Shown: piece after piece, positions 24,481 to 52,730 of the stretch
Layout of the letters: each line of letters begins with the position of its first letter
Numbering within the stretch: the stretch's first letter is position 1
Origin: Chrysemys picta bellii
Lineage: Eukaryota
DNA length: 64,000 nt
Reading direction: 5' to 3'
Assembly: GCF_011386835.1 (NCBI RefSeq)
Contig: NC_088791.1
Location: 15,376,001-15,440,000, forward strand
Notes under the pieces: model-generated
Databases searched by the model: none
What the model was told of the DNA's origin: nothing
The model's input: only the letters and a program-made list of their open reading frames with translations
Position numbers and translations under genes: made by a program

Positions 24481-26469
24481 GAAAAGTGGTTGGAAGATTT
24501 CCAAGTTCTACTGGTTTGTTTCTATCCCTAGAGCTAAAGTATAAAACTATAATCCCTACTGATGGATGTTTACCGTCTCTTCTTCACCCCAGGGCTGTGA
24601 TTCTGAACAGTGCTTAAAAAAAAATTCTTCATCCAAACCTGTCTAGTTGTTGTTTTTAAACTAACTTAGGTTTTGAATTTAGGCTGGTAACTTCTGGGTT
24701 TGGTAGCCTACCAAATTCCAGTTTAAATAAAATTTAACCTTGGGGATAAGATTGTAGCATGTATCCCAAGGGTCCATCGCTATACGTAATTATCAGTGAA
24801 GAATCCATTTAGTCTCAGAGGCCAAAGACAGTGTCGCTTGTTCAGCCTTTGTGTTCAGAGCTGTTGAAGGTTTTTTTAAATTCTGAAAGAAGTCAGAATG
24901 AAGCAACGAAGCTTTCATACAAGTTCTGCCGCAAACCCTCCATATTCCAGCAGTCTTTGTCTGCATCTTTGTCCTTGATTTCAACACTTCTTTATACCAA
25001 GGACCTCTGAACCAAAGCTGTAAAGAACTTGCAGAGCTGCAGTAAGTTTCTTGAAGTCTGTTAGAATTCATGTGATTCATTTCCCTTCTGCTACATCTTA
25101 GCATTGTATTGCCACTTCAAACACGGAGCCCACTTAACTTGTTCTGGACGACTTCAGATGTCAAGGCTATGAGGTTTTTGAGCATCCTGTAGCATTTACA
25201 ATGCAATTTCATTTCAAACAGCATCTTTTAAACAATATCTTGAAAGAAAGAAAAGCCACTGCCAAAAAAAAAAAAAAAAAAAAAAAAGGAGAAAATGCTT
25301 TCCAGGATGGATTAACAATGAGCGCACAGAGCGAGAGGTTTGTCTGACAACTAAAGCAGACCCAAATATTTGGGAATGTATAAAGAATGCTCAGCATCAA
25401 CCAGAGCTCAGATCCTGCATTTTTAAATGGACACAAAAGCGTCACCTTTTTTTTAATTAAGAACAGAATAAACTGAATGAAATAGAAGATTCAAGAAATT
25501 TTTTTTTTTAAATGGGAGGGCAGAAAAACACAGTTGTTTGTATGTTGCCAACACTGCATGAGATGCTTTACGATGAGGTAGGAACACCTCCCAGGTGTCT
25601 ATAAACTACAGCCCCAAACCTGCAAGCACTGATGGAAATATCTAACTTTACTCCCATTGGACTCAATCTTCAAGCACTGTAATACATGTGCTTACCTTTT
25701 CTCATGCAAGTAGTTCCACTGAAGTCAAGTCCTGTGTATTTGCAGGATGATGGTCTAAGACAATATACACGCTAGGAATAGTGAGGTTGGGGAGTTCATT
25801 CTCAAGTTTGTTCTGCAGTGGTCTTTCCTACTTTAACACAGATTTGTCCTGCTCCCCAGTTTAGACTGATTTTTTCCATCCTTGGAACTAGTTGAAAAGT
25901 TAACAATGGTAAAAGGCAAACAAAGGGAGCCATTCAGAACTGATCCTATAATAATATATACTGTACATCTAATATTTAAATATCAATTTGAGTTGATAGA
26001 GAAACATGGTGGCCAGTAACTACAAAAGAATATACCTCAAGCCAGAAAGACAAGCAGACAGAAGAGCAGAACTAGTTTATCAAAAGCATTGGAATGAGAA
26101 ATATTTTGAGATAAATACTGCTAGACAAAAAGAAGCACTGCAGTGAGGATTTTTTGGAATGAAAATGTTAAAATACAGTTTTGGGGGAAGCAAGTTAAAT
26201 TTCTTCAGGGTCCTTTTAAGCTCACTAACAATCACTTTCCTAATGAAGGGGAAAATTCCACTCCTCCTTTGTCACTTAAACTTATTACCATTCATTTATG
26301 AAGTTACCATAACATTTTAAGCTGTACCATAAGTTATAATAAAGTGCCAGCTGATTTTCGTTACAAACTGCATTGCAATTGAAGTATAATTTAGAAAATG
26401 CAAGATTAGGAGGCTTTGTTAAATATATTATTCTAAAATAAAACTATGGCCTAGTATAAAGTTGGGCAT

Positions 26470-29926: not shown

Positions 29927-32900
29927 ATCCGATACATGCTCTTTTATAAAGTTATTTAAGAATCTAAATTCTTTTCTTCCTCTCCACAATTCCTTCTGAC
30001 AGAATTTTATTCCACGAGGTGCACAGAAGAACAGAACGGTACCAGATTCAGCAATTTTAGAGCCCGTGAAAGTTAAAATAATGGAGGAATTATGCAGCAT
30101 TCAACAGCAGTTTTACCCTTCCCTTTAATGCCTTGGCAAAACTTGGACTGTCCAAGGAGGGGCGGTGGAGGAAAGAAGTGATTAAAATTGAATACCTCTT
30201 TGTGCCTTTCCATAAAAAAGAAAATTTACTATCTGAATAGCCATGAATGCTTACAAGGGACAAGGGACTCATTTGATTGTTTATGAAGATAGTGTTTTCA
30301 ACTCTCATTGGGCAAGCCTGGTAAAACAATTGCTGGAAGTGGAACTTAAAGTTACCAGCTTAGTAGTTTGGCTGCAAAGAAAGAGCACCAGATGATGCTG
30401 CTATTAACGCATTTTGTAATAGTGTGCTATGTAGCAATATCATGTTTTATAGCAACAAAGGTTTAGGTACAATTATGAAGAGTGGACGAACTCCCTTAAT
30501 TGCAAATTAATTGCTTACTCTAGCAGGGAGCTTGCTAATTCTACAGCTAAAATAGGCTATTTATCTCCTGCTGAGCTTGCGGCTACTTATTAAATATTTC
30601 CACAGTGGCAATGTGCCCGGTTTATCCGAGTCACTGTGAATGATCCTGCACATCAGGGTGCCTGATTTCAGAGGGTAGGTGCTCAGCATGTTACGAAAAA
30701 CAAGTCCCCAGAAGGTGTCTTCAGTTGGGCTCCCAAAAATTGAAGGCAACCAAGAATTGCTAGTCACTTTTGAAAATTCAGGCCATCTTCTTTACAACTT
30801 ATGATCAGAACTCAAATAATTGCAGGTACTCAGGCATAATCTTCACTAAGTGTCCACTTCCCCTGATGCTTGTGCTGGATCAATAGTTACAAGGTTTGTA
30901 TATCAGGGTGGCTGTTTGCCTCAAAGCCCCTCTCTACCTAGTAGGTAGTGGTGGTGATGATTATGGAAAATGTTGAAGTGTGGTTTTCTGATTCAACCGT
31001 TGCTGATGGCTCATTAACTGCTAGCAGAGGCGGATGTGGCTCTTAAAACAGAGGATCTAGGGTGTGGGCTGAACAGCCCTTGGGAGGAAACGCCAGGAAT
31101 ACACAATCATGGGCTTGACCTGGATTTTGTCTCATTGAATTTGGAGTTCTTTCTGTGAATAAAAATAACCGTCACGTTGATTGCGTTTGGAGCATGGTGG
31201 GGAAGACACCTGTTCATAATTATCTTGAACACATATCTTCCCAAAAGAAAAGGTGTTGCAAATTCAGACTATACTGAATATCTTAATATCCATTAAGAAG
31301 GCTGACATACCTTTTATCTAGTAGATTCTCCTTCTGAATTGCACCTGCATTGCTAAATATGGAGGGAGAGACTCAGATAATATCCTTAGCAGTTTCCATA
31401 ACTCCAATATCAGCTCTAATATGTTGTCTCCCTATGCAGCATCATTTTAGCCACTGTTCTAAAAGAGTTCTTGGACAAAGCAAGCAGACAAAGCGGCATC
31501 TCAGTCAGAGCTAAAGTGGCGAGAGAGGAAGGCAAAAAGATGAGAGACAATAAATGGAGTGGTGAAGGGAAATGTACATATATATCCAAGAAAGAATTTG
31601 TCCCTACCCCTTTTGTATTCTTGAAGTGTAACTGTATCTTCAGAGATCAGCACCAATATATCACTCTCTCTTACTCACATACACTTAAGAAAGCCTTTAA
31701 AACCCCCTTGAAAAAAAGTTTCCACAACAAGAGAGGCTTAGAACATGTATAATATGTAACCATGCCCCTAAGTAAACTTTTACCATTAAGGCTTGTGGAT
31801 AAATGCATTCAATGCACAGAATACAGTTTTACTTTGGACATTGTCTGGAAAAGGCTGAAGAGACATATGATAACCTCTGTTGTCTTAACCATCTTAACAG
31901 CCATTACCAATGAATAGCAGTAGATGGGGAGGAATGGAACACAGTTGTTCAGGAAACTCCAGAGAAGGGGTCAAGGGAGGTTACCAGAATGAAGGGAGAA
32001 AAGAATAATGAAGTACAGCACAGCTTAGTTTTCTCTGACCTACCCAAATAACATAAGCAGAACAAACCAATTTCAAAATCAGTGTCAAAAGCCAGAGGAT
32101 GAAATGTTGGTTCTCAGAAGATTCAAAATCTCTAGTTTTTGTACCCGTAAAAAGCATGAGTGGTTTTCTGTTGATGCACTACAATATAAGTACAAACAAA
32201 ACTAGTCAATGCTAGGCAGTGGAGGGACGAAGAAACTCAGGTTCTTTGTTCCTCATGCCTGATAGATGTGGCAACCATTTTAAAGGCCATGTTCAAATTA
32301 CTGCCATCATGGTTCAGATTTTTTGTTACTAATCTAGCTATCTCCTCGTTGTGACAGTGTATTGAAAAGCATTTGTGTTGGCTTAACATCCCCTAAAAGG
32401 AAAATGCTAAGAAACTACGGAGGTTAAAATGTTGTTAAATTTTAAGTATGCTACATTCACAGATCTTCATAAGCATGCCATGTTTACAGAACTATAAAAA
32501 GGGTCTTTTTCTCACTGAAGTACTGGCAGCAGACTGCACACTGCTGGAAAAGAAAAGGTGGGCATTCGATGGCGTATATTGTGCAGGCAGTGTAATGGGA
32601 CTCACACGGGGGAGATTTAAAAAAATCTATAATTTGCAAGTCCAATTTCAAAGTCATATCTAGGATAATGTGAAACTCAGGGTAGGAATCTTTAAAAAAA
32701 TATTCTTGGAAAATGTACATGTGTTCCTCAGAGAATCAAAGGGATTTACCTCTCTGCTTCGCTAGGCTGTTCTGTCTTTTTGACATTTTGATGTTGTTTA
32801 CTGTTCAAATCAAATTTTGGAATTATTGAGTGGTTCATTTGAAAGGTGTATTTTTGACTAACATTCAGACAGCTCTCCTAAGCCATGGCCAAGGAGTTGC

Positions 32901-33289: not shown

Positions 33290-36141
33290 AGTTTACCCAT
33301 AAATAAGACTTTTATTCTACAAACTATGATGTGCCAGTTTCCCTTTAGGACAGTACAGATCACAGCTACACAAATCCTGAGTAAAATTATATTTTTCAGT
33401 CTGATTAGTAAAATTGTATAGATCTATCATGTCAATAAGTCCACTGTTGTTGACGGATATAGGGTGAGAACACTGGGATAGGGCAGGAAAGTTATAATGA
33501 CAGTTCAGTTCGTCGTTTCTAAAGCCATTGCTGAGGGCTAGGTTTAGCAATGAAGAAGACTATAAGCTGTAACTTCTGAATTATATATTGATATTGCTCA
33601 GTCTAAAAGAAAACACATACAGACAAATTAAATAGGGCATACATTATACAAGAGTATACCATTAATTTTTTAAAAATAATAGTTTATCCTGGGAAGACCA
33701 GAATTATGGCTTTTGCCTACAAGCATAATCAAACACGGTAAAAAAAGACACATAACAACATAGACTTTATTATTATTATTCTACATGTTAAAAATGCAAC
33801 CACATCAAAATAGAATAAACAGTTAAAAAACTGTTGCAGAGGACATAAGAAAATAGTGTGTATATATTTTATATATAAAAATCTACAGTATTTACTAGTG
33901 TTGATACATATTTTGGAGCAGTCCCAGGCTGCTAGCACAAAGTAAATTGTACAGCTTTATTTATTATGAATCACAGAACCATGGTTAAAACTTTGGGATT
34001 ATTACACTTAACCACATTATATACATACATTGCTAAGCTGCTGTAAGCAATCAGAACTAAGATAAGCCCAAGTACTATTCATCATCTCAATTTCAGTTTA
34101 GAGTTTTTCAGTGTAGTGCTTAGCTACTGTTCCTTCACTGCAGTTTGCAATCTTTAAAATATAAAACTGCCCCGGTCATCACCAATTACACCGCTCATTA
34201 TATACACAAAAGAAGTGTGTGAAATATAGTAAATGTTACTTCCATTTTTAAAAACAAACATTTTACTTCTGTACCTTAAAACCTAGACAGCTAACCTGCA
34301 GCAAGAATAGGCACTACAGCTCATTCTTTAAAAGACAAATTGATCTGTTTTCTAGTGTTCAATGTACTCAGCTAACGCATCTCAAGAAAATGCAAATTGA
34401 CAAAAACCTCCCCAAACAAAGACTGATTTTTAAGTGTCCCGAACCTACCAGTGTTTTGGTATTTAAGTATTAGAGCTTTTAACAGAAAAGATTTATAAGG
34501 ACTCAGTCTTGCAAGAGGTCTGTCACCCTCAGCTCTCATTAACTTCAATGAGAGTTCAGAGTGCTTAGCAATTCCTACATTCAGCAGCTCATAAGACTGC
34601 ACCCCAAGTATGCCACTTAACCTGCATTTTTTTTTCTTTTCACAGTGGATGAAAGCCAAGGAGAATGTAGAGTACAAAAGGCTGCAAACACTAATTTAAA
34701 AAAAATATTTAATTACAAAGAGTCTATTAAGCTTCTTATTAACAGTCCAAGGCTGCACATCACACAATCTCTCAATGACCTGACAGTGCAGCAGCACTTG
34801 CCCATTCCTGGACATGAACCTATTGCTTTCTGGAAAAAGGAGGGCAAAAGCAAAACATGTCATTGAACTGACATTATCGAGCTCATGGGAAAGAGCACTG
34901 AATGCATTCATATAGCACTAGGGTTGCCAATTTTGGTTGGATGTATTCCTGGAGATTTCATCAGATGACAATCTTTAATTGAAGATTAATCTTTAACTCC
35001 TGGAGACTCCATGACAATCCTGGAGGATTTGCAACCCTACACCACACACAGAGGGTCAAAATAGCTACACAACCCCCATGTTCGGCCCTCAAGTTTCAAG
35101 TAACTGGCAATACTCTTATACCAGTAAGAGGACTGTTTGGCAAGCCAGTAGCTCACACTATGACTGGTTTGCTAAGTTAGACCCCATGGTAAGGCTGCAT
35201 GCTGTGAGAATGCAGCACCATTTCTGCTTCTAGCATTGTATACGTTGTGCTCAAATAGTTCAGGGGACTTAAATGGGAACACAAAGCATTGCTTTGCAAC
35301 ATTGGATTTGGGTACAAAGGTACAGACTCCGTGCTGAAAGTTCACCCAGACCCTAAAGACTTGCTACACTCAGACTGCCCTGATTTTAAGCACCATTTGT
35401 CGGCCAGATCAGAGTGACACTCTTTTTGGCTCCATGGTTTGCTTGTCTGTTCCTTCTGGCTGAGGGAAAGGCAAGATAGCAGCCAAAGGAATGGAGATTA
35501 ACTGGGAAATAGCATCCCATGTAAGATTACATTAACAACCCAGAGCATCTCTCCATCTTCAATCCGATCCTGGGTTACTGAGGCAGTTTGTATACAAAGA
35601 CAGGAAAGGCCATCCAAAATGAATGGGTCATTTATCAAATAAATTACAAAGAAAATAATTAAACTGAAATAAAATACTTCACTAACCTAGCCCAAGAGTA
35701 AATGCATCTACATTTTAGACTCTTTAGTTCTTCTCCAGCTACATGTTTGTGTATTTGCACAAGCACACTTACTGCATTGTAATGTCAGTCAAAATACAGC
35801 TTGCAAATGTGTTACAGTTGCTAGGCAGAAAGATTATAGCTCTGTGCAAATTATTTAAATTTCAGAAACATGGTAGTGTTAGACACATTTTGCAGATGAC
35901 TCTACTGCTATTGCTATGTTTATATGCATCAGATCCCTTTCAACAGGTTCAATGCAAGTTTAAAAGCTCAACTACCTTTCAGCCAAAGTTTAAAACGGCT
36001 TTGAAATAATGTTATTACTTTATCGGAGAACTGCATGAACTGCCCACGTTCTGTATAAAATACTGACTTGGACAATTATAAACACAGCAATATATATCTA
36101 ATGTTTTCGGTTCTTGCTTATTAGTTAGCATTGATGGATTC
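33290..36141 (-). other. USP6NL: USP6NL 3'UTR (extent inferred)
   Basis: Follows the TGA stop. AT-rich and mostly repeat-poor. Minus-strand AATAAA candidates at 33956-33961, 33766-33771 and 33311-33316. True end unknown. Confidence 0.45.
34919..35039. mobile_element. Short MITE
   Basis: TIRs TAGGGTTGCCAA / TTTGCAACCCTA; TSD not clear. Confidence 0.6.
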
Positions 36142-37592
36142 TCACAGAAGCACTGATTCATGCATAGACATCCCATCATTTTGGTTTCTGTAGTGCTGGG
36201 CAGGGGCTGGTGGGCCTGAATATTGATATTGTGCTGAACCATGTTCTTCCAAGGTTGGTGAAGTCCTATATCTTATTGGACTATCCACAGAAACAGTTGG
36301 AAGATTATGGTCCTGAAAAGGTGTTGGCTGACTGGCTGCATACTTCTGTAAATTACCCAAGTGGCTTTGGTTAGCATCTTGGTTCCAGGGCTGCCTGTAT
36401 ATCTCATGTCTGTACATATAAGCAGCATCCGGCCTCTTTCTGTTGTCTGGCAAATAATCCACTGGAGGAATTATAAATTTGACACCTGAGGGTGATCTAG
36501 AGTTGCCAGGATAGGCATCAACAGGTAAGACTTCTATTCGACTAGAAGGTGGAGAAATAGGATTTTGGCGATTGGCAGGATAAGAGTTCATATGTGGTTT
36601 ATCTGGAGAAAAATCTGTTGAAAAAACAGAACCATATGGTCTACCAGAAGTGTTGGTTCGATTCCCATGATTATACTGTGACGGTACAAAACTTGCACTA
36701 ATTGCGCTGGAGGCAGGCTTTGGAGTGTTTCCATGGTACGTAGGTGGGTTACTATAAGATGGTGGTGGCTGTTTAACATTTGATCTGTGATCTGACCCAT
36801 CAGACTGAGATGAATATCTTGGGCTTCTCTGTTGGGAACTGATGGCATAATTGTTGGATATTTTTAGTGGGCCAGGAATTTTTGCACCTTGCTTTCTAGG
36901 ACTACTAGAGTATGTTACATTCCTGGGACTTTGTGGATGAGCTCTTTCTAGCATCTCCTCAACAGGATTCTCATTCTCATGGTCAACACCTGGAATATTG
37001 TCATACTGCGATGCGTTAGACCCTCGCTTACCTCCATCAGCATCCAAACCCCTCATCTTTTGCTTTACATTCAATGGCTGTGGTTCACCAGGACTTGGTG
37101 GTGTCCCTGAAATAGCATGGTTTACTGACCTACCTTTTACCTCCACGGTAAGTTTTGTAGTCTTTTCAATAACTTTGATATCTGAAGGTTTATTCCATTT
37201 AGGTACAAATCCCCTTCTTGTATCTGAAGTAGCATTAGAATTTTGGTTAGCAGCTGCATTGTTATATTGTCTAGAATTGTCTTGTACTGTTGACTGAGGC
37301 TTTTTTCTGATATCTACGTCATTCTTAGATAGCTCACTCCGGACTGCTGGTCCAGGCTTTTGTTGTTTTAAAGAAGGCTTCTTTTCCAGTGAATTAATTC
37401 TTCTTCGGTTATTTGGTGAATCTTCTTGTACTTTTTCAGGAGATAGTCTCCTTTCTGTCCTTCTTGCTGTCTGTGTTCTTGAAATACTAGTGTTGCTCTG
37501 TCCATTGAGCATATGAGTAAGATTAAGCACGGCAGGCTGAGGTTCCAATAGAATTTGTCCCAACGGCTTCTTTGGAAATTCATCTTCTTTAC
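36142..37592 (-). CDS. USP6NL: USP6NL (RN-tre) terminal coding exon; long low-complexity C-terminal tail
   Basis: Acceptor TTTTTTAG|GTAAAGAAGAT (phase 1, GKEDEFPKKPLGQ). Motifs QYNNAAANQNSNATS, FVPKWNKPSD, GKRGSNASQYDN, PPSYSNPPTYHGN, SRIEVLPVD, IIPPVDYLPDNR, PFQDHNLPTVSVDSP.RY and C-terminal ESVLL* match human USP6NL as recalled. TGA at 36142-36144. Confidence 0.97.
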
Positions 37593-37655
37593 CTAAAAAA
37601 TAAGTAATAAAGTAAATTGAAGTTTTTTCATATGGAACTCTGCGTGTGTGTTAAA

Positions 37656-37657
37656 CA

Positions 37658-37708
<51 letters not shown>
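37656..37708. repeat. (CT)n(CA)n compound microsatellite near the terminal-exon acceptor
   Basis: Direct reading. Confidence 0.9.
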
Positions 37709-38268: not shown

Positions 38269-38405
38269 NNNNNNNNNNNNNNNNNNNNNNNNNNNNNNNN
38301 NNNNNNNNNNNNNNNNNNNNNNNNNNNNNNNNNNNNNNNNNNNNNNNNNNNNNNNNNNNNNNNNNNNNNNNNNNNNNNNNNNNNNNNNNNNNNNNNNNNN
38401 NNNNN
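38269..38405. other. Assembly gap (137 N)
   Basis: Run of N; its true length and content are unknown. Confidence 0.99.
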
Positions 38406-39665
38406 GAGTCAAAAATAAATTCAGCATATAAATGCTTGTTTCTTAACTTTGTTAGTATAAGTATGCAATCAGGTGTGCAGTTATGTTAGACAACTATACC
38501 ATGCGAGGTGAAACACAAGGCCAAGAGACTTCTAAACACAAGAAAAATGGGTATCCAGTGTAGCTATACACCCAAAGTATGCAAGAGCTTTTAATTTTTA
38601 AACACAAATTTTTTGTTAAACACTGAACAGTAAGTTCACTAAAACTGACTAATGGTTACATTAGATAGTTACACTTAAATGCTTTGTCAGCCAATCAGCC
38701 TCTTTTCATAATGACCCTATTAAAAATGTACAGTATAGCTAAAAGATTATGCTTACCACCTTCATTTTTTAACTTCAGTTCTTTTTTATGATCATTGTAG
38801 TTTGAAGAGAATTTATTTAAATATCTAGGTACTACTAAGGTCCCCATCACCACAGAATCTGAATGCCAAATAGGAACACTAATATTTCTGTTCTGACAAA
38901 GATGGCAGTAAAAGACAACAGCATTTACTTAAGAGCAGCATATAAGTGGAGAGTTCTCTTTTGGTTATGAGCACAACATATCTTCCATCATTCAATGTTT
39001 AAATGTCAGTCTCTTAAGGGGACACAATATTCCAGATTGCAACCATGTAAAAACTTAATTATAAACAGAGAAATGAGAGCTATACAGACTGTCTGATAAT
39101 GCCCATATGACTATTTATACCAACATTTCTGTTCAAATTACTCTCTCCTTTCAAAGCAGTCAGAGCTATTTTCCCATTCTAAATTAATACTAGTAAATAA
39201 GTTATTTCCACACCTCATAAAATTGTAGCTTCCCTACTTACGTACAGCAATTTCTTTCAGATTATAAATAGAAAAAAGTTAAGTATGTAATTTTTAAATG
39301 CATCCCCCACACAATCTGTTTGAAAATTTGCCTGTAACTTTTAAAAATCAGACAGGATAGCCAAATAAACTCTATCATATATCAGTTTACTAAGTAAAAA
39401 CTGCAAGGCCAGAAAAAAAAGCCCTGGTTTTGCTGAAAAATTATATAGAAAAGCTATGTAAAATTGTTGGTAGAGAAATAATTTAGTGTTTTGATCCTCA
39501 TTGCTGCACTAGAGACACAGGACCATGCAACTTTTCTCTATCACTGGAAAATCTGAAGTTAAAAGTTAACATCTCATCATCACCAGTTATTTGTATGAAC
39601 AATTCATTCTGCATCTCTGTATAGTGCACCTGAACGAACACTCAGACATACTTGTGTCTCTAAAA

Positions 39666-40000
39666 CAGGGATCGTCAACCTTTGGCACGTGGCCTGCCAA
39701 GGTAAGCACCCTGGCGGGCCAGGCCAGTTTGTTTACCTACCGCTTCCACAGGTTTGGCCAATTGCAGCTCCCACTGGCCGCGGTTCGCAGCTCCAGGCCA
39801 ATGGGGGCAGCGGGAAGCGGCAGCCAGCACATCCCTTGGCCCGCGCCGCTTCCCGCAGTCTCCATTGGCCTGGAGCAGCAAACCGCAGCCACTGGGAGCC
39901 GCGATCGGCCAAACCTGTGGACGCGGCAGGTAAACAAACCGGCCTGACCCACCAGGGTGCTTACCCTGGCCGGCCACGTGCCAAAGGTTGCCGATCCCTG
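39666..40000. mobile_element. Near-perfectly palindromic hAT MITE (335 bp)
   Basis: CAGGGATCGTCAACCTTTGGCACGTGGC ... GCCACGTGCCAAAGGTTGCCGATCCCTG. Exact 8-bp TSD CTCTAAAA at 39658-39665 and 40001-40008. Confidence 0.95.
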
Positions 40001-41616
40001 CTCTAAAATATAATGTTTAGAAGTATTAATAGCGTCATGGAAATTGTACAAACAATATGAGTTAAATCTTTGACAGCTGATTCTCATTAAAGGGGGATGG
40101 CAGAAACTGAGATTATCATTGGATAGCACATAGGAACTGCCATCAAGGATCAGGGCCACATCATGCTAGATTCTGCATAGGCAAATAAAAACAGAATTTA
40201 CAGTCTAGGTGTCAGACAGGAGGTGACAGGTCCACAAAACAGAAACGTGATGAGGGTGGGCGAGATGACAAAGTAACAAAATGAGAGTTTAACAGAGAAG
40301 TCTCTGTTTGCTGCTTGCCTAACTAATGCCAGTTTCATAGTTATTGTATGCTGGTGGTCATTCTCATTCTGCTCCAAATGAAGTCTACAGTATTGTGTAA
40401 GGTCAAACTTACCCCCTGCCTGAGGTCTTGCTGCAGTAGTAATTTAAAACAAACGTCAGCCTAAACTTAATCCTTCCAGCCTGACTGTTCTTAAGTTTTC
40501 TCGTGTCTATCACTGGTTTCACTCCAATCAGGTGGTCTCAAAACTTGGCAGAGTTAACAAGCTTCCTGCCACAAAGAGTCAGCAGAATCCACTCAGCTGA
40601 TTTATGCAGGGCACTAACCCCTGCTAGCCTGATAGGTCACAGAAGAGTCCAGCATCCCTATGCAGAGGGGTCGATCGTGCCACTCTGTTACAGTTATATT
40701 TCAAAAGAAGGTAAGTGAACCTTTCAAGCTGACGATTAAGAAAATAAAGTTAAGTTAGAATTGTTTTCCCCACAAATTTCCAAGACACAGAAAAAGACAT
40801 AAAAAAGAGAAACTATGAAGGGGCTAATAGCAAATCCATAAATGTCTTAGAAAACCTCAATCAGCAAGTGCACTCAAATCGCACAGACGACATGATCAGT
40901 AAGAAAGAACTGACTGCTTTTCTGCATGGCTCTGTTTTTTTTTTTTTTTTTTAAACAATCCATATAGAGTACATAGAAACTATGATGACAGGTGCTTTAA
41001 GAATGCTGAGAGATTTCTTCATAACGATGGCTTTCCAAGACAATATACTGAACACTACATCACACAGTTAAAAAAATTGTCCCATATTCTTTTTGTCCCC
41101 TCTGTAGGGGGTGGAATTCACTCCCTACAGAGGCTCTGCAAAACCTTTAAATCATTTATGTCCCACTTACGCCCTCCAACTAGGGTGTATGCAGGACTTA
41201 AGACCTTGTGCTTGTCTTCTGCACAGGGATGAATTTCACCCTTAATAAATATTCCAACACCAGAGCCATATGTCGTTAGTTTTTCCCATCTTATTTGTCT
41301 CAATGAATTTTTTTAAATTAAGTAGTACAGCATTTCAGAAAAATGAAGCAATTCTGTGTAATACTAAATTGTCTATTTTAATGATAAGAATGAAGTCTGA
41401 ATCGGGAAGTAAATACATACAATATGCCCTTCAAAAAAAAAGTTTGTGTAAATTATACAGAAGTGATCTTGGTTTTATATGCTGTTAAGTAGTTTGCAAC
41501 TTTCAGGTGATCCATCAGGTGTTATGGGATGTTGTAAGAAAATGGCCCATCAGTAACTATAATGATGTAATTTTTACACAGATAATTTAATGTGCTTGTA
41601 TGCAATAAACATTATT

Positions 41617-41677
41617 GGGGGTTGGACTAGATGACCTCTTGAGGTCCCTTCCAACTCTGATATTCTATGATATTCTA
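41617..41677 (+). mobile_element. CR1 3' tail fragment
   Basis: GGGTTGGACTAGATGACCTCTTGAGGTCCCTTCCAACTCTGATATTCTATGATATTCTA. Confidence 0.85.
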
Positions 41678-43018
41678 AACCTCTTAAGAAAAAATGGTCC
41701 TCCTTTGTCAATAATGTCTTCCATGCTTGAAATATAAGTATTCAATCTATTTTTAAACAATAAATAGTTGCATTCATATTTAAATATGCATTCCAGTGCT
41801 CTTCCAGTACCTACATCAATGCTTTCTGTATTTGCATATACACATTTAAAAGCATCAACTGTTTTCCCTTCTCTTTCAGTCTTGAAGAAATTCACATAGA
41901 GCAGATTGGAATCCTTTGAAATGTGCTTGGTTGAACAATAAGTTTTTTGTTTTTTTTAATTCGACACACTTAAGGTCTCTTAATTACCATTAAGCTTTCA
42001 TAAAACCCAAGCGAGAATATTGCAGACATTTTTTATTGAATTCTACATTGCTTTGAAGATTATTTTCTGTAATCTTTCTCGCATGGTTCACAGTAACCGA
42101 GTGCATTAGCATTGGTGTGTGTGGTTTATATGATGTATGCAATAACCTGAATTATAGTCATAAAAAGGATGTCAGAACAACCCTACACCGTAATATTAGT
42201 TATGGAACACTATTGTGAAGCTGTTAAACTTTAGACTGAATGTTAAGACCAGAGTAACAGCCAAAATGTTCCAAGCCTACAACTGTTCTTTCGAAAGATA
42301 AAACCGTGGGCATTCTAATAACGTGATACCAGGCTTTTACTTTCTATGACTTGATGACACTGGAGCTTAGAGTCTGCATAGAAACAAAAGATAAGATATA
42401 GGATGAAAAAAGACAGAGCTTTATATCTTCATCATAAAGCCTCCACACAACACAAATTAACTTGGCCTCGCACTCAAACATCGAAAATCTTGTCTGGATC
42501 AGCAGAGTATTGGAGTACAAGAAGCATTTGTACTCCAACCTTTAGATACAGCCACTTTACTAAACTCTGTTAGCTATGCTCCGTTTTCCTAACAGGTAAA
42601 GCAGCAAAACACATACCTGGATCCTAGGCTCAGTCATGCTCAGATTAATATTCACTAAGGTTTGCCCACCTCTTACCATAACACAACCAAGGCTAAAGAC
42701 ATCATCAAAAGTGATGGGGTAGTGGCATAGTCCAATAACAAGAATCTTACAGCATAAAGGCATATTCCAAACCACTGCCACCTCCTACAAAAAGAACACT
42801 GTTTTAAGCTATAAACAGACTATATTTAATTAGGGTGTTGGTCACTCCCAGTAAATCCACAATCATTCTTAGGGGCTACCAACTGCATTAGATGCCAAGA
42901 ATAATTTATTGCCCTTGAAAACAATAAGAGCTCTTAAATTTAACCTAAAATTAAAGAAAATGAAATCCTTTGAGGCACATGAAATAAAAACAGGAAGAAT
43001 AATTTGCACACCCATCAC

Positions 43019-43070
43019 CATGCATATTAATGCAAATATATATGGCTCAAACTCACAAAGAAAGCATGCA
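43019..43070 (-). promoter_or_regulatory. Two UGCAUG (RBFOX) elements downstream of the candidate cassette exon
   Basis: CATGCA on + at 43065-43070 and 43019-43024, i.e. about 44 and 90 nt into the intron after the 43114 donor in transcript orientation. Confidence 0.6.
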
Positions 43071-43113
43071 AATCATGTACATGAATGTTGTGAAAAAGCC
43101 AGAGATAAAATAC

Positions 43114-43164
43114 CAGGAGACACTTGGGGGGTAGTAGCGAACAGGAAGACCACGATGTCGGGTG
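43114..43164 (-). CDS. USP6NL: Candidate alternative 51-nt in-frame exon of USP6NL (APDIVVFLFATTPQVSP)
   Basis: Acceptor TTTTTCTTTTTCCTCTGTTCCTACCAG|, donor CTG|GTATTT. 51 nt, phase 1 to 1, matching the flanking exons; no stop. Inclusion in transcripts not verified. Confidence 0.6.
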
Positions 43165-46100
43165 CTGGTAGGAACAGAGGAAAAAGAAAAACAGGTTCAT
43201 ATCCTCACCTCTAAAAAAAGCAAAATGAGAAAAAAAATAAAAAGAAATACCCAGAGTGAAAGAGCAAGCAAATAACCATAGAAACAGAGAGAGAGGGAGA
43301 GAGCGAGCGCAAGCCCCTCTGTTGAGAAGAAGTATGCAAATAAAACATCTCATGACTTGTCACGGTAACATGCCAAATATTCCTTTGCAAGTTCTGCATC
43401 ATGTTCCACCACACTTCAGCCTAAAGCTTCACCTGCAGCCTCAGCCATGCTTTCACCTTGACCCCTTCAACTGCGATTTTTAAGCTCAATTGTTAAGAGT
43501 CCCCAGAGCTGAACCCCTAAGAATTAGCAACAGGGTGTTCTCAGTGTTGCTGCCTTAACTGGAATTAGTTTCCACCATTGGCCCAAAGATTGAGTTTACT
43601 AACATTCAGGGCACATTCACTTGTTTGACTGCAGGGCACATTTTGATCGAGTTAACAGTTGTTTCTGGGCTGGGAATTGTTATATAGTTTACAGAGGTTA
43701 ACAAATCTTCTCTAAGATGCATTTGCACCAAACGATAATATTAATAGGGCAACTGAAAAAAAAAAAACAGAAAATATGAAGTGGAAACTGTCAGCTGGTG
43801 GCTGTTTTGGCAGCAGCAATTAACAGTATTATTGCCCAAATGTGCTGGTTTTGTTTTCTCAAGCTTTCTGGGCAACTGGATTTTTCTTAGCCTGCCATAA
43901 TTAGATGCATAGTGAGGTGTGAAATTGTATTCTTATTCCTCCTCCCCTTTAACATACCAAGAAACTAAACAAAACGTTTAATTATTGGGCCTTCCTCAAA
44001 AGGAATCGGATAGAAACTCTGCATGAGAAACGACACAGTTGATACTGTGCCATTTTTTGTGTGGAAGCGTGTAATGATTTGGTTATCCTGTGTCTAAAGT
44101 TAGGGGAGTCCATGCAGCAGCAGTACAAAAAACCAGAGAGAGCAGCAAAAAAACGGGGGAAAACAAAGAAGTCAATACAACTAGTCCTAAAATGATCTGA
44201 AATTAGAGTCATATTAAAAGGGTTTTTATTCTACTGACTTACTCTTGATCTAAAAAGTCTCTGTCACCACCCAGTGGAAATCAATCCCAACTACAAGACT
44301 TTACAGATTAATTGCTTCAGCAGGCACTAACAGCTTCTTGCATTGAATAACAGACATATAATTGGACTAAAGTGCTTTAAGTGCTCTCTCCGGTGAATAA
44401 CAGTCTAGTCCTTAATTTCAGCACAAGCATATACACACTTTGTTCTAATACAGTTTTCAAGCATAGTAAAGGGTCAGAAAAATTATTCAGTTAAAATGAC
44501 ATCTTGGTATTTTGTGTTTATTTAGCATCAGTGACTTTCTCCATCTTATTTGCTCCATTTAAGAGTCAAAAAGGACTTTTTAAAATGTTACTGCTTGTAC
44601 TGGACGTTCAAACTGCTATCAGAAAGTCAGACTAGCTTCTTGCTCCTCAAAATGCCATCATCAACAAAAGGGGATTCTGGAGTTATAACTTGGATGGCAA
44701 TTTTGATGATGGAGCATGAGGCAGATGAGAATACACAGTTTGCTTTTCTGTAGCTATATTAGGTTTGCAGTGCTGATGGTTGCAAAAACTCACTTTTTAA
44801 TTATAAACATTTGTATTTAGATTAAAAACAATGCAATTAGTGAAAAATGCTTAACAGACTTCCAGGATAGTTTTGTGTCAAAGCAAGGTGACTTTTTATA
44901 GTCATTTTCTAGTTATAATCACATTACATTTTATATCACTAATTCTTACATTTCTTGAGAAAAATTGCACTGAAAGATTCAGTAAAAAAACTGTGAACCA
45001 CCAGCTGCATCATAATTTCATTTATAGCGATATAAAAATGTGCAAACTAAAGAGGTCAAGCAATAAAAGATTTTTAAACAGTGCAGAACCAATATATAAA
45101 ATTGCTGGAAATAACACCATTCCATGCTCTACTATCCTTTTATAATATCAGAAAATACACATCAGACAAGCACTAGAAAAATTATAGGAAACACATGATA
45201 GAAATGCATTTTGGTTTAGTTGGTTAATAAATAAAATGCAGTACAAAAATTAAAAAATAGCTACGTTTGTTTTCTCCAAACATATAAATGAAAAATCCCA
45301 AATTCCTCTGAAACAAAAAACAATAGAAGATGCATAGCATCAGAAATAGTAAATCAAGCAGAGTTTCATAATTTTGTTGCCTTACTTGTCAGTGTCGTAA
45401 GATGCATTTCACTGTCTAACGTTTACAGCTAACGACATACATCCTTTGGCAGATTATCACTAAATTATTACATACACGGCTGCAGAATTAATAGAAAAAT
45501 ATTAAACTGAAAAACAAAATCTGTGAAAAACATAATATTCAAACTTTCCACTATTTTTTCCGCACACAGAAAAGCGAGACATGTGGGTGCAACTGAGGCA
45601 GCCAAACTTTAAAGCAAGGGTTACTACACACACAGAGTGTAAAATGACTAAGCGGACAAAGGCAGATTCTAAGTTTGGAATTTGACAGAAATAGTGCCTA
45701 TGTAAAAGTGGAGCAGTGCCTATTAGATGACCTCAGGAGAAATTTTCAGCTACTTTAAATTGGTGTAGCTCCATTGAAGGCTTTACAGACATGAAGAAAT
45801 GTGAGATTTGGGTCACAGGATGATTTTTTGGGCCTCTTTTGTACTTTGTGGGTCACAATATGGATGGTAGGTGACTGCAAGAGTGGACTTCAGGATCTTC
45901 GAATTTTGAAATCTGACCTGACTGACTTGTTCAGGAACTTTAGACTCAGAATCCAGTTTCCACCCAACTACCTAAGGTCTACAGAGAAGGTAGAGGCAAG
46001 CCTCTTGGAAGCACATTGATTTTGTTACTGGTTCTATGACTAAGAGAATAGGTGGGAAGTTATTCCCATAATTTAGGAGCATTTCAAAGGATTTTTTTTG

Positions 46101-48320
46101 ACACTGGGCAAGTAAAGAATCTGTATTAAGGAGTTTTTTTGAACTCAGTGGCATAACTCAATGAGTTACTTTCATTACCCATTGATCTACGGAGCAAAGT
46201 ACCCACAGAGTAACAGCCTGTTCCAAAAGGATCCATCAGGAGGATGGAGACTGGAGTCATGCAGACTTAGAGGTAGTGTGCATTAGCAGATTTTAGAAGT
46301 TGTTCCTTGGCCGTGTAGCCCTCATTGCATTGCGATGGCCCCAGGAGATGTTATTTTCTCTTCTGCTAAGACTGTTTGAGGGGATGCAGAGGAGAAATCT
46401 CAGAAGGGTTGCTTGCCTCTACATGAGCATTTGTAGTCCTCCTCCTGGTGCCTTGATGAAAGGAGGGGCTTGAAACTATGAGGCATCTTCTGAAGCACTC
46501 CACATTCCTAAAGCTTCCAGCAGGTTAGCAGAGGCCATCCTGGCACAGATTGACTCACAAGAGGATTCTGCCAGAAAGGTTAAAGATCTCCAATCTGCTC
46601 TATGAACAATATTCCTGGCTTTGGTCTTCGGCATTTCAGTGGGTACCCTATGCTTTATGCCTAGCTTCATGGCAACTAACTTGATTGTGATCTCATTGTG
46701 CTCCTGGAACTTGGATGTTCACACTAAGTATTTAATGGCTTCATCTCAACACACATAGGCAAACCATTTAAACAAAAAAAAATCAAAACAAATATTGACA
46801 TTTTTCTGCCTCTTCATCCCCTCCCCTTCTTCTGAAGGAAGGGAGCTCTTTGGTTCTGAGTTTAAAGCCATGCAAGAAGAAACCAAGGGAACTCTGTTGC
46901 AGGTTTCCTCCTAGAAGTGCTGGGCAAAGTTAATACCTCTTTTGATATCTGACCACAGCCTGCCCATATAGGGTGTCTGGATTTTCCTGTACTGACAAAG
47001 ACTGACAGATGGAGAATTCCACTGAGCTTAATTAGTTCTCTGCTATTTTTGGATGACTGATACTGATGCAGTCTGTTGAAGGCTATATTTTTATGTTAAT
47101 TTTAAATGGTTTTTAGTTCATAACAATTAAAGGTGTAATTGTTGCTCAGTGCAAGAATGTAAGAAAGGATTTCTCTCCAATTTTAGTTGAGAAAAAAAAT
47201 AAAACAAACATTTTTTTTCCCCCAGACTCTAATGGGTGCTTACATGACCAGACTAGTTTTTCTAAGCATTGCTACATGGCATATAGTGATTTGACAAGTT
47301 TATGTAATAAATAAATAAATAAAAAGGGCTAAAGATCATGCAGGTAGCAGAATCAGACAGACAGACATTTGAGCAAGGTTAAATGTCTAGAGAATGCTGA
47401 GAGCCTGTAGAAAAATATTATTGCCTGAAGACAGTGATTAGAAAAACCAAAATGAACATCAGAGTGAAGAAAAATCAAAGGCTTGTGAAATTCATAAGAA
47501 CAAATGAGGCATCAGACTTACTCAGCTAAGGATAACAGGAGACAAATCTGCTAGATTTCTGAGGATTAGGATAAAGGTATTTTATATTTATTTTGTGAAA
47601 AAGGTGAGTAATATTTCCACTCACCCCAAACAAAAATATACCACACATACAGAGAGTTTCCCAGGCTATTAAGGCAGAAATAAAGGAAAATCGAAGTCTC
47701 CTCCCCACATCCAGCAATAAAACATAATTAGCTTTCTTTGCAGTGATTTTACCCAAGCAGCAGCACACCCCATGTTAAAAAATAGTTATTTTTTTTCACA
47801 TCAGTGGTACTTTGGCTACCCAAGGTAAGAGCAAAAGAAATTCTGAAAACAAACTATTATTGGCTCATCAAGGGCCACACCTTTTAACAAACAAGATATG
47901 CATTGTCTACTGTGGAGTATGACTTGCATTCCATTTCCAGAATTTCTCATGGTAGAGATACATGCCCTGCACCTCCATGGATCATCATTCCCCAGAGATA
48001 TTTACTCCTAAATACTCCCTTCCTCTGTGATATATCAAACACTCAAATACATGCATCTCTAGTGCACACCTCACTCCCTTAAAGAACGTGCCTGCTCCCT
48101 TCCCCTGGGAGACCTATGATTGGACACTTGTCCTATTTCACTATCATCAGTGAGAACTGGTATGAACCCAATCTTTCTTTCTGCTTTAAAGTGACACTCC
48201 AGGATGAGTGGGCAACAGCAAGGCCGGAACCAGGGACCTCTGGATGTAAAAGGAAGAGCTCCTACTGCCTGACCTAAAGAATCCAGCTTCTGCAGCACAA
48301 AGGCTGTCGCCCTATATAAT

Positions 48321-49483: not shown

Positions 49484-49717
49484 TAGAACCATAGAATCGG
49501 AGAACTGGAAGAGACCTTGAGAGATCATCTAGTCCAGACCCCTGGACTCATGGCAGGACTAAGTTTTATCTAGACCATCCCAGGTTTGTCTAACCTGCTC
49601 TTAAACGTCTCCAATGATGGAGATTCCACAACCTCCCTGGGCAATTTATTCCAATGCTTAACTACCCTGACAGTTAGGAAGTTTTTCCTAATGTCGAACC
49701 TAAACTGCCCTTGTTGC
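49484..49717 (-). mobile_element. CR1 3' end fragment
   Basis: Reverse-orientation tail (TAGAACCATAGAATC...GATCATCTAGTCC) and C-terminal ORF2 sequence (GACAGTTAGGAAGTTTTTCCTAATGTC). Confidence 0.85.
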
Positions 49718-52577: not shown

Positions 52578-52730
52578 CAGCTGCTGGTAGATCCAACTTT
52601 GCTCGTTTCAGTTCAGACATCGAATTTTGGAGCTGCTCTATTACAAAGTCATCTTCTAAGAAGAAATCCTTGGCTAGAGTCTCCTGAAGGAATTCTACAA
52701 GTTCTTCCATTTGTAATTTCAGCAGATGTT
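52578..52730 (-). CDS. USP6NL: USP6NL penultimate constitutive coding exon (end of the TBC-domain region), 153 nt
   Basis: Acceptor CCAATCTAG|AACAT, donor GCTG|GTAAGA, phase 1 to 1. Encodes (K)[50 protein letters not shown](G). Confidence 0.97.

What the first reader, a model, noticed from the sequence alone, without database searches (positions are those of the whole stretch)
42900..45500. Possible splice-switch module in the last USP6NL intron, at the boundary between the GAP domain and the tail
Seen: this ~2.6-kb stretch has no recognisable transposon although the rest of the intron has many. It contains, all on the USP6NL strand, two frame-preserving exon candidates (51 and 42 nt), two stop-containing candidates (acceptor 44093; exon 45386-45479), an AG/GT junction site (43209), three UGCAUG motifs and a minus-strand AATAAA at 42905-42910. 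Established: the upstream exon ends the TBC Rab-GAP region and the terminal exon encodes the long low-complexity tail. Inference: the block may be an RBFOX-type regulated switch between full-length, peptide-inserted and tail-less or NMD-targeted isoforms. An alternative reading is that 44093 to ~42890 is an alternative last exon giving a TBC-only protein.
Basis: partly seen in the sequence, partly recalled or inferred. Interest (0 to 1): 0.72.

Follow-up and report, generated by a model that had tools for sequence, protein, structure and literature searches.

The report
Tail-removing alternative exons in USP6NL

Summary
The window is painted turtle (Chrysemys picta bellii) USP6NL, minus strand.

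Homology and annotation show something real:
It shifts the frame, so translation stops at a TAA made by bases 2-4 of the terminal exon. This is RefSeq isoform X8 of this turtle (399 aa, complete TBC domain, no tail); Pelodiscus has the same form.
It is annotated in frame in Lepidochelys, and after exon A in three squamates.
- Against Python DNA, exon B is 47/51 identical and exon A 36/43. Substitutions favour the A+B reading frame.
- A tarpon has a 58-nt cassette of the same design.

No support was found for the 42-nt candidate, acceptor 44093, exon 45479-45386 or the AATAAA at 42905. RBFOX control is weakly supported, since only one GCAUG core aligns in Python. Nonsense-mediated decay (NMD) is not expected, because the stop lies in the last exon. 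The exons are therefore already known from annotation, but no paper in the held library describes them.

The parts
52578..52730 (-). Penultimate coding exon (153 nt, 51 codons, ends ..LDLPAAG in phase 1; donor CTG|GTAAGA). It supplies the 5' splice site for everything below. Some annotated isoforms skip it.
45265..45307 (-). Exon A, a 43-nt frame-shifting alternative exon. The acceptor is strong (15/18 pyrimidines, CAG|AG). The donor AAC|GTAGCT is very weak (U1 pairing -1.3 kcal/mol, against -8.0 for the penultimate exon). It encodes the C-terminal 15 residues of Chrysemys isoform X8, from ..EEFGIF to ..WRKQT.
45168..45264 (-). About 100 nt directly downstream of exon A, conserved against Python (73% over the block 45331-45168). 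Either a splicing control region, or the start of a 3' UTR if the donor is not used.
44232..44533 (-). Cluster of conserved non-coding elements between exons A and B. The core 44424-44350 is about 95% identical to a passerine, and 44314-44232 is 76% identical to Python. It holds an AATAAA at 44522-44517 that is conserved in the passerine. No conserved splice sites.
43203..43212 (-). AG|GTGAGG site, a strong 5'-splice-site-like motif (U1 pairing -10.2 kcal/mol) 45 nt upstream of the exon B acceptor. Python has GAG|GTAATA at the aligned place. Role unknown.
43114..43164 (-). Strong acceptor (16/18 pyrimidines) and weak donor CTG|GTATTT (-4.2 kcal/mol). 47/51 identical to Python. Read in frame it inserts 17 residues (Lepidochelys X1/X5). 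Read after exon A it encodes TRHRGLPVRYYPPSVSW, ending at the terminal-exon TAA (squamate forms).
43019..43070 (-). Two UGCAUG motifs, 45 and 91 nt downstream of exon B. The distal one aligns with GGCAUG in Python inside a small conserved block. The proximal one falls in a Python gap.
41914..42126 (-). Conserved non-coding element just outside the block. The core is about 90% identical in turtle, Python and passerine, and contains AATAAA at 42037-42032 (AGTAAA in Python).
37587..37592 (-). First bases of the terminal exon, GTAAAG. After any insertion of length 1 mod 3 the frame reads xxG TAA, so the stop is at 37591-37589. The same GTAAAG is found in Python, the passerine, a turtle-like mRNA contig and the tarpon.

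Best explanation
The last intron of painted-turtle USP6NL holds a conserved pair of alternative exons, both with strong acceptors and weak donors.

Exon A (45307-45265, 43 nt) shifts the reading frame by one. Whether it is joined directly to the terminal exon or through exon B (43164-43114, 51 nt), translation stops at a TAA formed by bases 2-4 of the terminal exon. The product keeps the whole TBC Rab-GAP domain. It ends in a short conserved peptide, 16 residues with A alone or 33 with A+B, and lacks the roughly 480-residue tail. Because the stop lies in the last exon, the mRNA should escape exon-junction-dependent NMD and be translated.

Exon B alone is frame-neutral and inserts 17 residues between domain and tail.

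Shown here: the exons, their frames, their conservation, and their presence in public gene models of this and other species.

Inferred: that inclusion is regulated (the weak donors suggest dependence on enhancers, and RBFOX binding downstream of exon B is one candidate, at about 0.3). Also inferred: that the tail-less protein is uncoupled from the partners that published work places on the RN-tre C-terminal part.
For: Annotation:
- Chrysemys picta bellii isoform X8 (XP_065405468.1, P0295, 399 aa) ends ..LDLPAA then the exon A peptide and stop. Pelodiscus X4 does the same.
- The exon A peptide equals the translation of window 45305-45267. tblastn of the snake tail hits 45314-45264 (E 4e-6) and 43166-43113 (E 5e-9).
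- Squamate models join A to B and end in W-stop: Ahaetulla X4, Python XP_025031209.1 and Rhineura X4. That ending is only possible if B is spliced to GTAAAG.
- Lepidochelys kempii X1 and X5 carry exon B in frame. The peptide is identical to the translation of 43162-43115.
- X8 keeps PF00566 over its whole profile, 2-216 of 216.

Conservation:
- In the Python locus L003 the layout is collinear. Exon A is 32464-32506 (36/43 identical) and exon B is 34312-34362 (47/51 identical), with much less conserved flanks.
- The four exon B differences are 3 synonymous and 1 non-synonymous in the A+B frame. In the in-frame reading they are 1 synonymous and 3 non-synonymous.
- The weak donors are themselves conserved: GTAGCT/GTACCT for A and GTATTT/GTATTC for B.
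- A tarpon gene model uses a 58-nt cassette in the same intron and stops at the same GTAAAG-derived TAA.
Against: - No RNA reads were examined.
- The supporting isoforms are computational RefSeq/GenBank models.
- No turtle model joins A to B.
- In the turtle, reading through the exon A donor gives ACG TAG, the same protein as splicing to the terminal exon. Isoform X8 therefore cannot distinguish a cassette from an alternative last exon.
- A passerine keeps the exon A acceptor but has a 41-nt version, which gives a different frame. It has no detectable exon B, and no short bird isoform appeared among the best 120 hits.
- No homologue was seen within 10 kb downstream of the penultimate exon in a bat and a marmot. 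That is inconclusive.
- UGCAUG is not conserved as such.
Confidence: 0.8

Rival explanations
1. In turtles exon A is not a cassette. It is the start of an alternative last exon: the weak donor is left unused, the frame stops at once (ACG TAG), and the transcript ends at an intronic poly(A) site. A candidate signal is the AATAAA at 44522-44517, about 750 nt downstream. The protein is the same tail-less form.
For: - Donor read-through gives the identical protein in the turtle.
- The exon A donor is extremely weak.
- Snake isoforms Ahaetulla X3 and Crotalus X4 continue after ..WRTHT with residues that start like the translation of the Python intron after exon A. So read-through transcripts are modelled there.
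- The AATAAA at 44522-44517, with a U-rich stretch after it, is conserved in the passerine.
Against: - Squamate A+B models show that the exon A donor is used.
- The weak donor is conserved between turtle, Python and passerine.
- The 44522 signal does not align in Python.
- No 3'-end data are available.
Confidence: 0.3
2. The block is transposon-poor and conserved mainly because it carries transcriptional enhancers. These could act on USP6NL or on a neighbouring developmental gene. On this view the small exons are minor or noisy by-products.
For: - The best-conserved cores have no conserved splice sites or open frames: 44424-44350 is about 95% identical to a passerine, and 42126-41914 is about 90% identical in three species.
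- They are rich in homeodomain-, forkhead- and NKX-like motifs. That reading of the motifs is my own.
- They persist in a passerine that lacks exon B.
Against: - Exon B is 92% identical to Python while its flanks are not. Its substitutions fit a coding frame, and the encoded peptide is identical in three squamates.
- Enhancers and alternative exons can coexist. This rival explains the elements between the exons, not the exons themselves.
Confidence: 0.15
3. One reading: an RBFOX-driven switch in brain, muscle and heart, in which downstream UGCAUG motifs promote inclusion of the 51-nt exon.
For: - Two UGCAUG lie 45 and 91 nt downstream of exon B in the turtle.
- The distal one aligns with GGCAUG inside a conserved ATTAATA-n-GCATG block in Python.
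- The weak exon B donor is conserved.
Against: - The proximal motif falls in a Python gap, and the distal one is not UGCAUG there.
- GCATG occurs about once per kb in these introns.
- There is no motif near exon A, the exon that decides the outcome: the nearest GCAUG is +138 in the turtle and +256 in Python.
- There are no tissue data.
Confidence: 0.3
4. The block is ordinary intron, and the listed motifs are chance pseudo-exons.
For: Candidate-exon density equals that of neighbouring intron.
Against: Annotated isoforms in at least eight species use exons A and/or B. Conservation against Python is collinear.
Confidence: 0.03

Closest known systems
RefSeq model XP_065405468.1, USP6NL isoform X8 of Chrysemys picta bellii (and Pelodiscus sinensis X4, XP_075764344.1)
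   Same: It is the product of exon A in this very genome. It has the TBC domain, then the 15 residues encoded from exon A, then a stop.
   Different: It is a computational model. The protein alone does not tell whether exon A is spliced onward or read through. I found no published description in the held library.
Squamate A+B isoforms (Ahaetulla prasina X4 XP_058047085.1, Python bivittatus XP_025031209.1, Rhineura floridana X4 XP_061494328.1)
   Same: Homologous exons A and B in the same order and spacing, with the same stop at the start of the terminal exon.
   Different: No turtle model joins A to B. The turtle peptide differs at a few residues.
Lepidochelys kempii isoforms X1 (XP_073184875.1) and X5
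   Same: Exon B is included in frame, with a 17-residue insert identical to the translation of window 43164-43114.
   Different: This form is not annotated for the painted turtle. The substitution pattern against Python does not favour this frame.
Tarpon (Megalops atlanticus) model MATL_G00261570, with similar short isoforms of zebrafish (X4) and coelacanth (X5)
   Same: A cassette of length 1 mod 3 in the last intron (58 nt in tarpon), with the stop made from the GTAAAG start of the terminal exon. The coelacanth peptide shares FHLY with exon A.
   Different: Homology of the fish exon to exon A is not demonstrated: only a few shared residues, and no DNA alignment. There is no exon B counterpart.
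Experimentally truncated RN-tre (Matoskova et al. 1996, Oncogene 12:2679, as listed in the references of PMC2553197)
   Same: A USP6NL/RN-tre protein lacking its C-terminal part. The title reports Eps8 SH3 binding and a growth advantage on C-terminal truncation.
   Different: That is an artificial truncation in mammalian cells. I saw only the title, not the truncation point. The natural isoform ends in a conserved extra peptide.

Membership tests
Alternative cassette exon that truncates the protein by frameshift | AG acceptor and GT donor flanking a short exon whose length is not a multiple of three | tested here: met
   Exon A is 43 nt, CAG|..|GTAGCT.
Alternative cassette exon that truncates the protein by frameshift | Transcripts both with and without the exon | tested here: inconclusive
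   Gene models with and without the exon exist in this species and others. No reads could be examined.
Alternative cassette exon that truncates the protein by frameshift | Exon spliced onward to a downstream exon | tested here: inconclusive
   Shown by the squamate A+B models. In the turtle, read-through and onward splicing give the same protein.
Conserved functional alternative exon | Exon more conserved than its flanking intron across distant species, with coding-type substitutions | tested here: met
   Exon B is 47/51 and exon A 36/43 identical to Python. In the A+B frame the exon B differences are 3 synonymous and 1 non-synonymous.
RBFOX-regulated exon | (U)GCAUG within about 300 nt of the exon | tested here: met
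   UGCAUG at +45 and +91 from exon B in the turtle.
RBFOX-regulated exon | Motif conserved at the aligned position in other species | tested here: inconclusive
   One GCAUG core aligns in Python, where it reads GGCAUG. The other falls in a gap.
RBFOX-regulated exon | Inclusion follows RBFOX expression or perturbation | not testable with these tools
   No expression data.
NMD-targeting poison exon | Premature stop more than about 50 nt upstream of the last exon junction | tested here: not met
   The stop, TAA at 37591-37589, lies inside the terminal exon.
Alternative last exon with intronic polyadenylation | Poly(A) signal and cleavage site downstream of the alternative exon, with 3'-end reads | tested here: inconclusive
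   AATAAA signals are present at 44522-44517 (conserved in the passerine), 42910-42905 (not in any block conserved with Python) and 42037-42032 (inside a conserved element). No 3'-end data.
Recursive splice site | Pyrimidine tract, then AG directly followed by a 5'-splice-site sequence | tested here: met
   tttttttagAG|GTGAGG at 43209, and GAG|GTAATA in Python.
Recursive splice site | Junction or lariat reads showing stepwise intron removal | not testable with these tools
   No reads. From my own knowledge, vertebrate cases are described mainly in much longer introns than this 15-kb one.

The most novel reading that the evidence does not exclude
The tail-off exon is an ancient regulated switch of bony vertebrates. 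On this reading the tarpon, zebrafish and coelacanth cassettes are homologous to reptile exon A. All of them rely on the invariant GTAAAG start of the terminal exon as a hidden stop codon. The switch produces a stable Rab-GAP-only USP6NL with its own conserved C-terminal peptide, uncoupled from tail-dependent partners. A counterpart could still exist deeper in the longer mammalian intron. The conserved AG|GTGAGG site and the non-coding elements between the exons would be part of its control.
Probability: 0.25. Interest if true: 0.6.

Novelty: already known. Interest (0 to 1): 0.4.

Why it matters
USP6NL (RN-tre) is studied as a Rab GAP (Rab43 in PMC2064371). Its C-terminal part is linked to Eps8 and Grb2 by the titles of Matoskova 1996 and Martinu 2002, listed in the references of PMC2553197.

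A naturally encoded, evolutionarily constrained isoform keeps the whole GAP domain but swaps the tail for a short conserved peptide. Such an isoform would separate catalytic activity from tail-dependent recruitment. That is a concrete, testable handle on what the tail does.

For the scan, the case shows two things. A motif-only reading can land on a real alternative exon and still miss the decisive one. And checking annotated isoforms of related species settles such claims quickly.

The exons are already in RefSeq models. The added value here is the cross-species anatomy: the two-exon logic, the shared hidden stop, the favoured reading frame and the conserved weak donors.

Tried and rejected
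Only local translation, alignment and scripts were used on the block.
- The look-up of encoding contigs found nothing for four NCBI proteins: Mauremys X3, Emydura X2, Carettochelys X1 and Buceros. Other turtle loci could therefore not be fetched.
- The first two protein searches showed no insertion at the LDLPxxG|KEDEF junction in 150 of 150 proteins that keep the penultimate exon. The relevant isoforms were hidden by the length window of the first search, by the 90% clustering, and by the display limit of 120 hits. They surfaced only through the search with the TBC part and the cluster listing.
- Mammals: no homologue of exon A, exon B or the conserved elements within 10 kb downstream of the penultimate exon in Molossus and Marmota. 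This is inconclusive, because the intron may be longer.
- Coelacanth and fish tails against the window by tblastn gave no significant hit.
- A 48-nt exon-like piece at 44290-44243 (donor AGA|GTAAGT) was rejected because the donor is absent in Python and the passerine.
- Literature searches on USP6NL or RN-tre with splicing, isoform, RBFOX and truncated isoform found no description of these exons.
- A findings search by the word USP6NL returned nothing.
Exons were translated and compared one by one, by reference.
Full report
**Context.** The terminal-exon translation (window 37590-36145, minus strand) is 100% identical to USP6NL isoforms of Chrysemys picta bellii, so the window is painted turtle. 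The penultimate coding exon is 52730-52578. It ends ..LDLPAAG with one base carried over, and its donor is CTG|GTAAGA. The terminal exon starts at 37592 with GTAAAG. The last intron is therefore 52577-37593, about 15 kb. An N run at 38269-38405 was left alone.

**Check of the observation.** As motifs they are not unusual.
- A crude scan for pyrimidine-rich acceptors paired with GT donors gives 5 frame-preserving, stop-free candidates in the block. Five equal-sized neighbouring intron pieces give 3-6.
- Three TGCATG compares with about 1.1 expected from the strand-wide density.
- The zone without intra-window repeats is 42000-48000, wider than the block.
- CR1-like ends flank that zone at 41617-41669 and 49490-49542.

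**Expression data.** Everything below rests on annotation of this and other species and on comparison with loci fetched through proteins.

**Annotated isoforms.** Two searches anchored on the tail and on the junction region showed the canonical link (three residues ending in G, then KEDEF or a close variant) in 150 of 150 proteins that keep the penultimate exon. They also showed that several turtles and birds have models that skip the penultimate exon.

A third search, with the TBC part alone, brought up short isoforms. The cluster listing of the best one was decisive.
- Chrysemys picta bellii isoform X8 (XP_065405468.1, 399 aa) and Pelodiscus X4 end ..LDLPAA, then 15 further residues (EEFGIF..WRKQT), then a stop.
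- Lepidochelys kempii X1 and X5 have a 17-residue insert between ..LDLPAA and GKEDEF.
- Ahaetulla X4, Python bivittatus XP_025031209.1 and Rhineura X4 end with the exon A peptide followed by a second peptide (TRYRGLPVRYYPPSVSW) and a stop.

**Mapping to the window.**
- The X8 ending is encoded at 45307-45265 (exon A, 43 nt). Translation of 45305-45267 gives EFGIFHLYVWRKQ, and tblastn of the snake tail hits 45314-45264.
- The second squamate peptide is the same exon B read one base later (tblastn E 5e-9). That is exactly the frame produced when a 43-nt exon precedes it.
- After A, or after A+B (94 nt), the frame enters the terminal exon as xxG TAA. The result is ACG TAA after A (ending in T) and TGG TAA after B (ending in W), which matches the annotated ends.
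- The stop at 37591-37589 lies in the last exon, so exon-junction-dependent NMD is not expected. This is an inference from the usual 50-nt rule.
- X8 keeps the full PF00566 profile, 2-216 of 216.
- I did not submit any joined model to a tool. The frames were worked out exon by exon.

**Conservation.** The Python locus L003 has the same layout:
- the penultimate exon ends near 25197;
- exon A is 32464-32506;
- exon B is 34312-34362;
- the terminal exon starts at 40470 with GTAAAG.

The details of the comparison are as follows.
- Exon B is 47/51 identical and exon A 36/43, with much weaker flanks.
- The four exon B differences are 3 synonymous and 1 non-synonymous in the A+B frame. In the in-frame reading they are 1 synonymous and 3 non-synonymous, and all 4 are non-synonymous in the third frame. 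The sample is small, but it points to selection on the A+B peptide, which is also identical in three squamates.
- Both exons have strong acceptors (15-17 of 18 pyrimidines).
- Both have weak donors that are conserved. U1 pairing is -1.3 and -0.9 kcal/mol for A (turtle, Python) and -4.2 in both species for B, against -8.0 for the penultimate exon. Conserved weak donors are typical of regulated exons.

Turtle-Python blastn gives five collinear blocks in the intron:
- 47055-46920;
- 45331-45168 (exon A plus about 100 nt downstream);
- 44314-44232;
- 43195-43084 (exon B);
- 42126-41914.

A passerine genomic contig (L001) gives a mixed picture.
- It keeps the exon A acceptor and start, but with a 2-nt deletion, so the exon would be 41 nt and the frame different.
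- It has no detectable exon B.
- It is about 95% identical over 44424-44350 and 82-88% over 42050-41951.

Those cores have no conserved splice sites and look like transcription-factor binding clusters. That reading of the motifs is my own and is untested.

**Deeper relatives.** A tarpon gene model (L007) has a 58-nt cassette at 47058-47115 in a 2-kb last intron. It ends CG|G TAA at the same GTAAAG. Zebrafish X4 and coelacanth X5 end in R or W, as this design predicts, and the coelacanth peptide shares FHLY with exon A. Homology to exon A is plausible but not shown. In a bat and a marmot nothing similar lies within 10 kb downstream of the penultimate exon, which is inconclusive.

- Acceptor 44093, exon 45479-45386 and the AATAAA at 42910-42905 lie outside all blocks conserved with Python and have no counterpart in any isoform.
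- The AG|GTGAGG site at 43209 is a strong 5'-splice-site-like motif (-10.2 kcal/mol) 45 nt upstream of exon B. Python has GAG|GTAATA at the aligned place. Its role is unexplained.
- Of the three UGCAUG, two lie 45 and 91 nt downstream of exon B. The distal one aligns with GGCAUG in Python within a small conserved block, and the proximal one falls in a gap.
- There is none near exon A.
- I therefore put RBFOX control at about 0.3.

**An open point.** In the turtle, reading through the exon A donor gives ACG TAG, the same protein as splicing to the terminal exon. Isoform X8 therefore cannot show whether exon A is a cassette or the start of an alternative last exon. Snake models of both kinds exist: A joined to B, and A read through. 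An AATAAA at 44522-44517 is conserved in the passerine.

**Literature.** Searches of the held library for USP6NL or RN-tre with splicing, isoform, RBFOX and truncated isoform found no description of these exons. Fuchs et al. 2007 (PMC2064371) assign Rab43 to RN-tre. The reference list of PMC2553197 gives Matoskova et al. 1996 (RN-tre binds the Eps8 SH3 domain; growth advantage on C-terminal truncation) and Martinu et al. 2002 (Grb2-mediated recruitment). These are the reason a natural tail-less form is of interest.

**Verdict.** The feature is real.
- One of five candidates was right.
- The key exon was missed.
- NMD is not expected.
- RBFOX control is unproven.

The exons are already in public RefSeq models, including for this genome, so I file the feature as already known. 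The cross-species anatomy is a modest addition.

Noticed in passing
window 52578-52730 (-): The penultimate exon (153 nt, 51 codons) is itself skipped in annotated isoforms. Chrysemys X3/X5/X6, Mauremys X3, Apteryx X2 and a Ficedula model join ..ILKLHR to S-KEDEF. This trims the end of the TBC profile match (2-213 of 216 instead of 2-216).
   Followed up: partly
window 41914-42126 (-): Non-coding element about 90% identical in turtle, Python and passerine over about 110 nt. It contains TAATGGTAATTA, CCTTAAGTG and an AATAAA (42037-42032; AGTAAA in Python). It is either enhancer-like or a conserved intronic poly(A) region.
   Followed up: partly
window 44350-44424 (-): A 75-nt core about 95% identical to a passerine but poorly aligned in Python. 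The neighbouring 44314-44232 is conserved in all three species. No conserved splice sites.
   Followed up: partly
window 43203-43212 (-): A strong 5'-splice-site-like AG|GTGAGG lies 45 nt upstream of the exon B acceptor. Python has GAG|GTAATA at the aligned place. It could be a decoy U1 site or a recursive-type site. Unexplained.
   Followed up: partly
window 37650-37700 (-): A (GT)n(GA)n microsatellite lies about 60-110 nt upstream of the terminal-exon acceptor.
   Followed up: no
window 39661-40005: Inverted repeat with 161-nt arms, 88% complementary, separated by 23 nt. It looks like a hairpin-forming or MITE-like insertion in the same intron.
   Followed up: no
L001 1447-1540 (passerine contig, SRR30534049): The exon A homologue keeps its acceptor and the GTAGCT donor but is 41 nt (2-nt deletion). 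It would not reach the GTAAAG-derived stop. With the missing exon B and the absence of short bird isoforms among the best hits, this suggests loss of the switch in this bird.
   Followed up: partly
P0167, P0172, P0312 (Logan-derived, mammal-like proteins): Mammal-type USP6NL proteins end in ..DRKSVV right after, or shortly after, the TBC region. This may be a different route to a tail-less form in mammals. Their contigs were not fetched, because the species is unknown and could be human.
   Followed up: no
P0291 (Ahaetulla X5) against L003 40470-40480: This isoform ends one residue earlier (..PPSVS). That fits use of the next AG, 6 nt into the terminal exon, which turns TG|A into a TGA stop.
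   Followed up: no
window 8001-9000: The stretch is 64.6% G+C with strong positive GC skew, in an otherwise 40-50% G+C region downstream of the gene. It looks like a CpG island.
   Followed up: no
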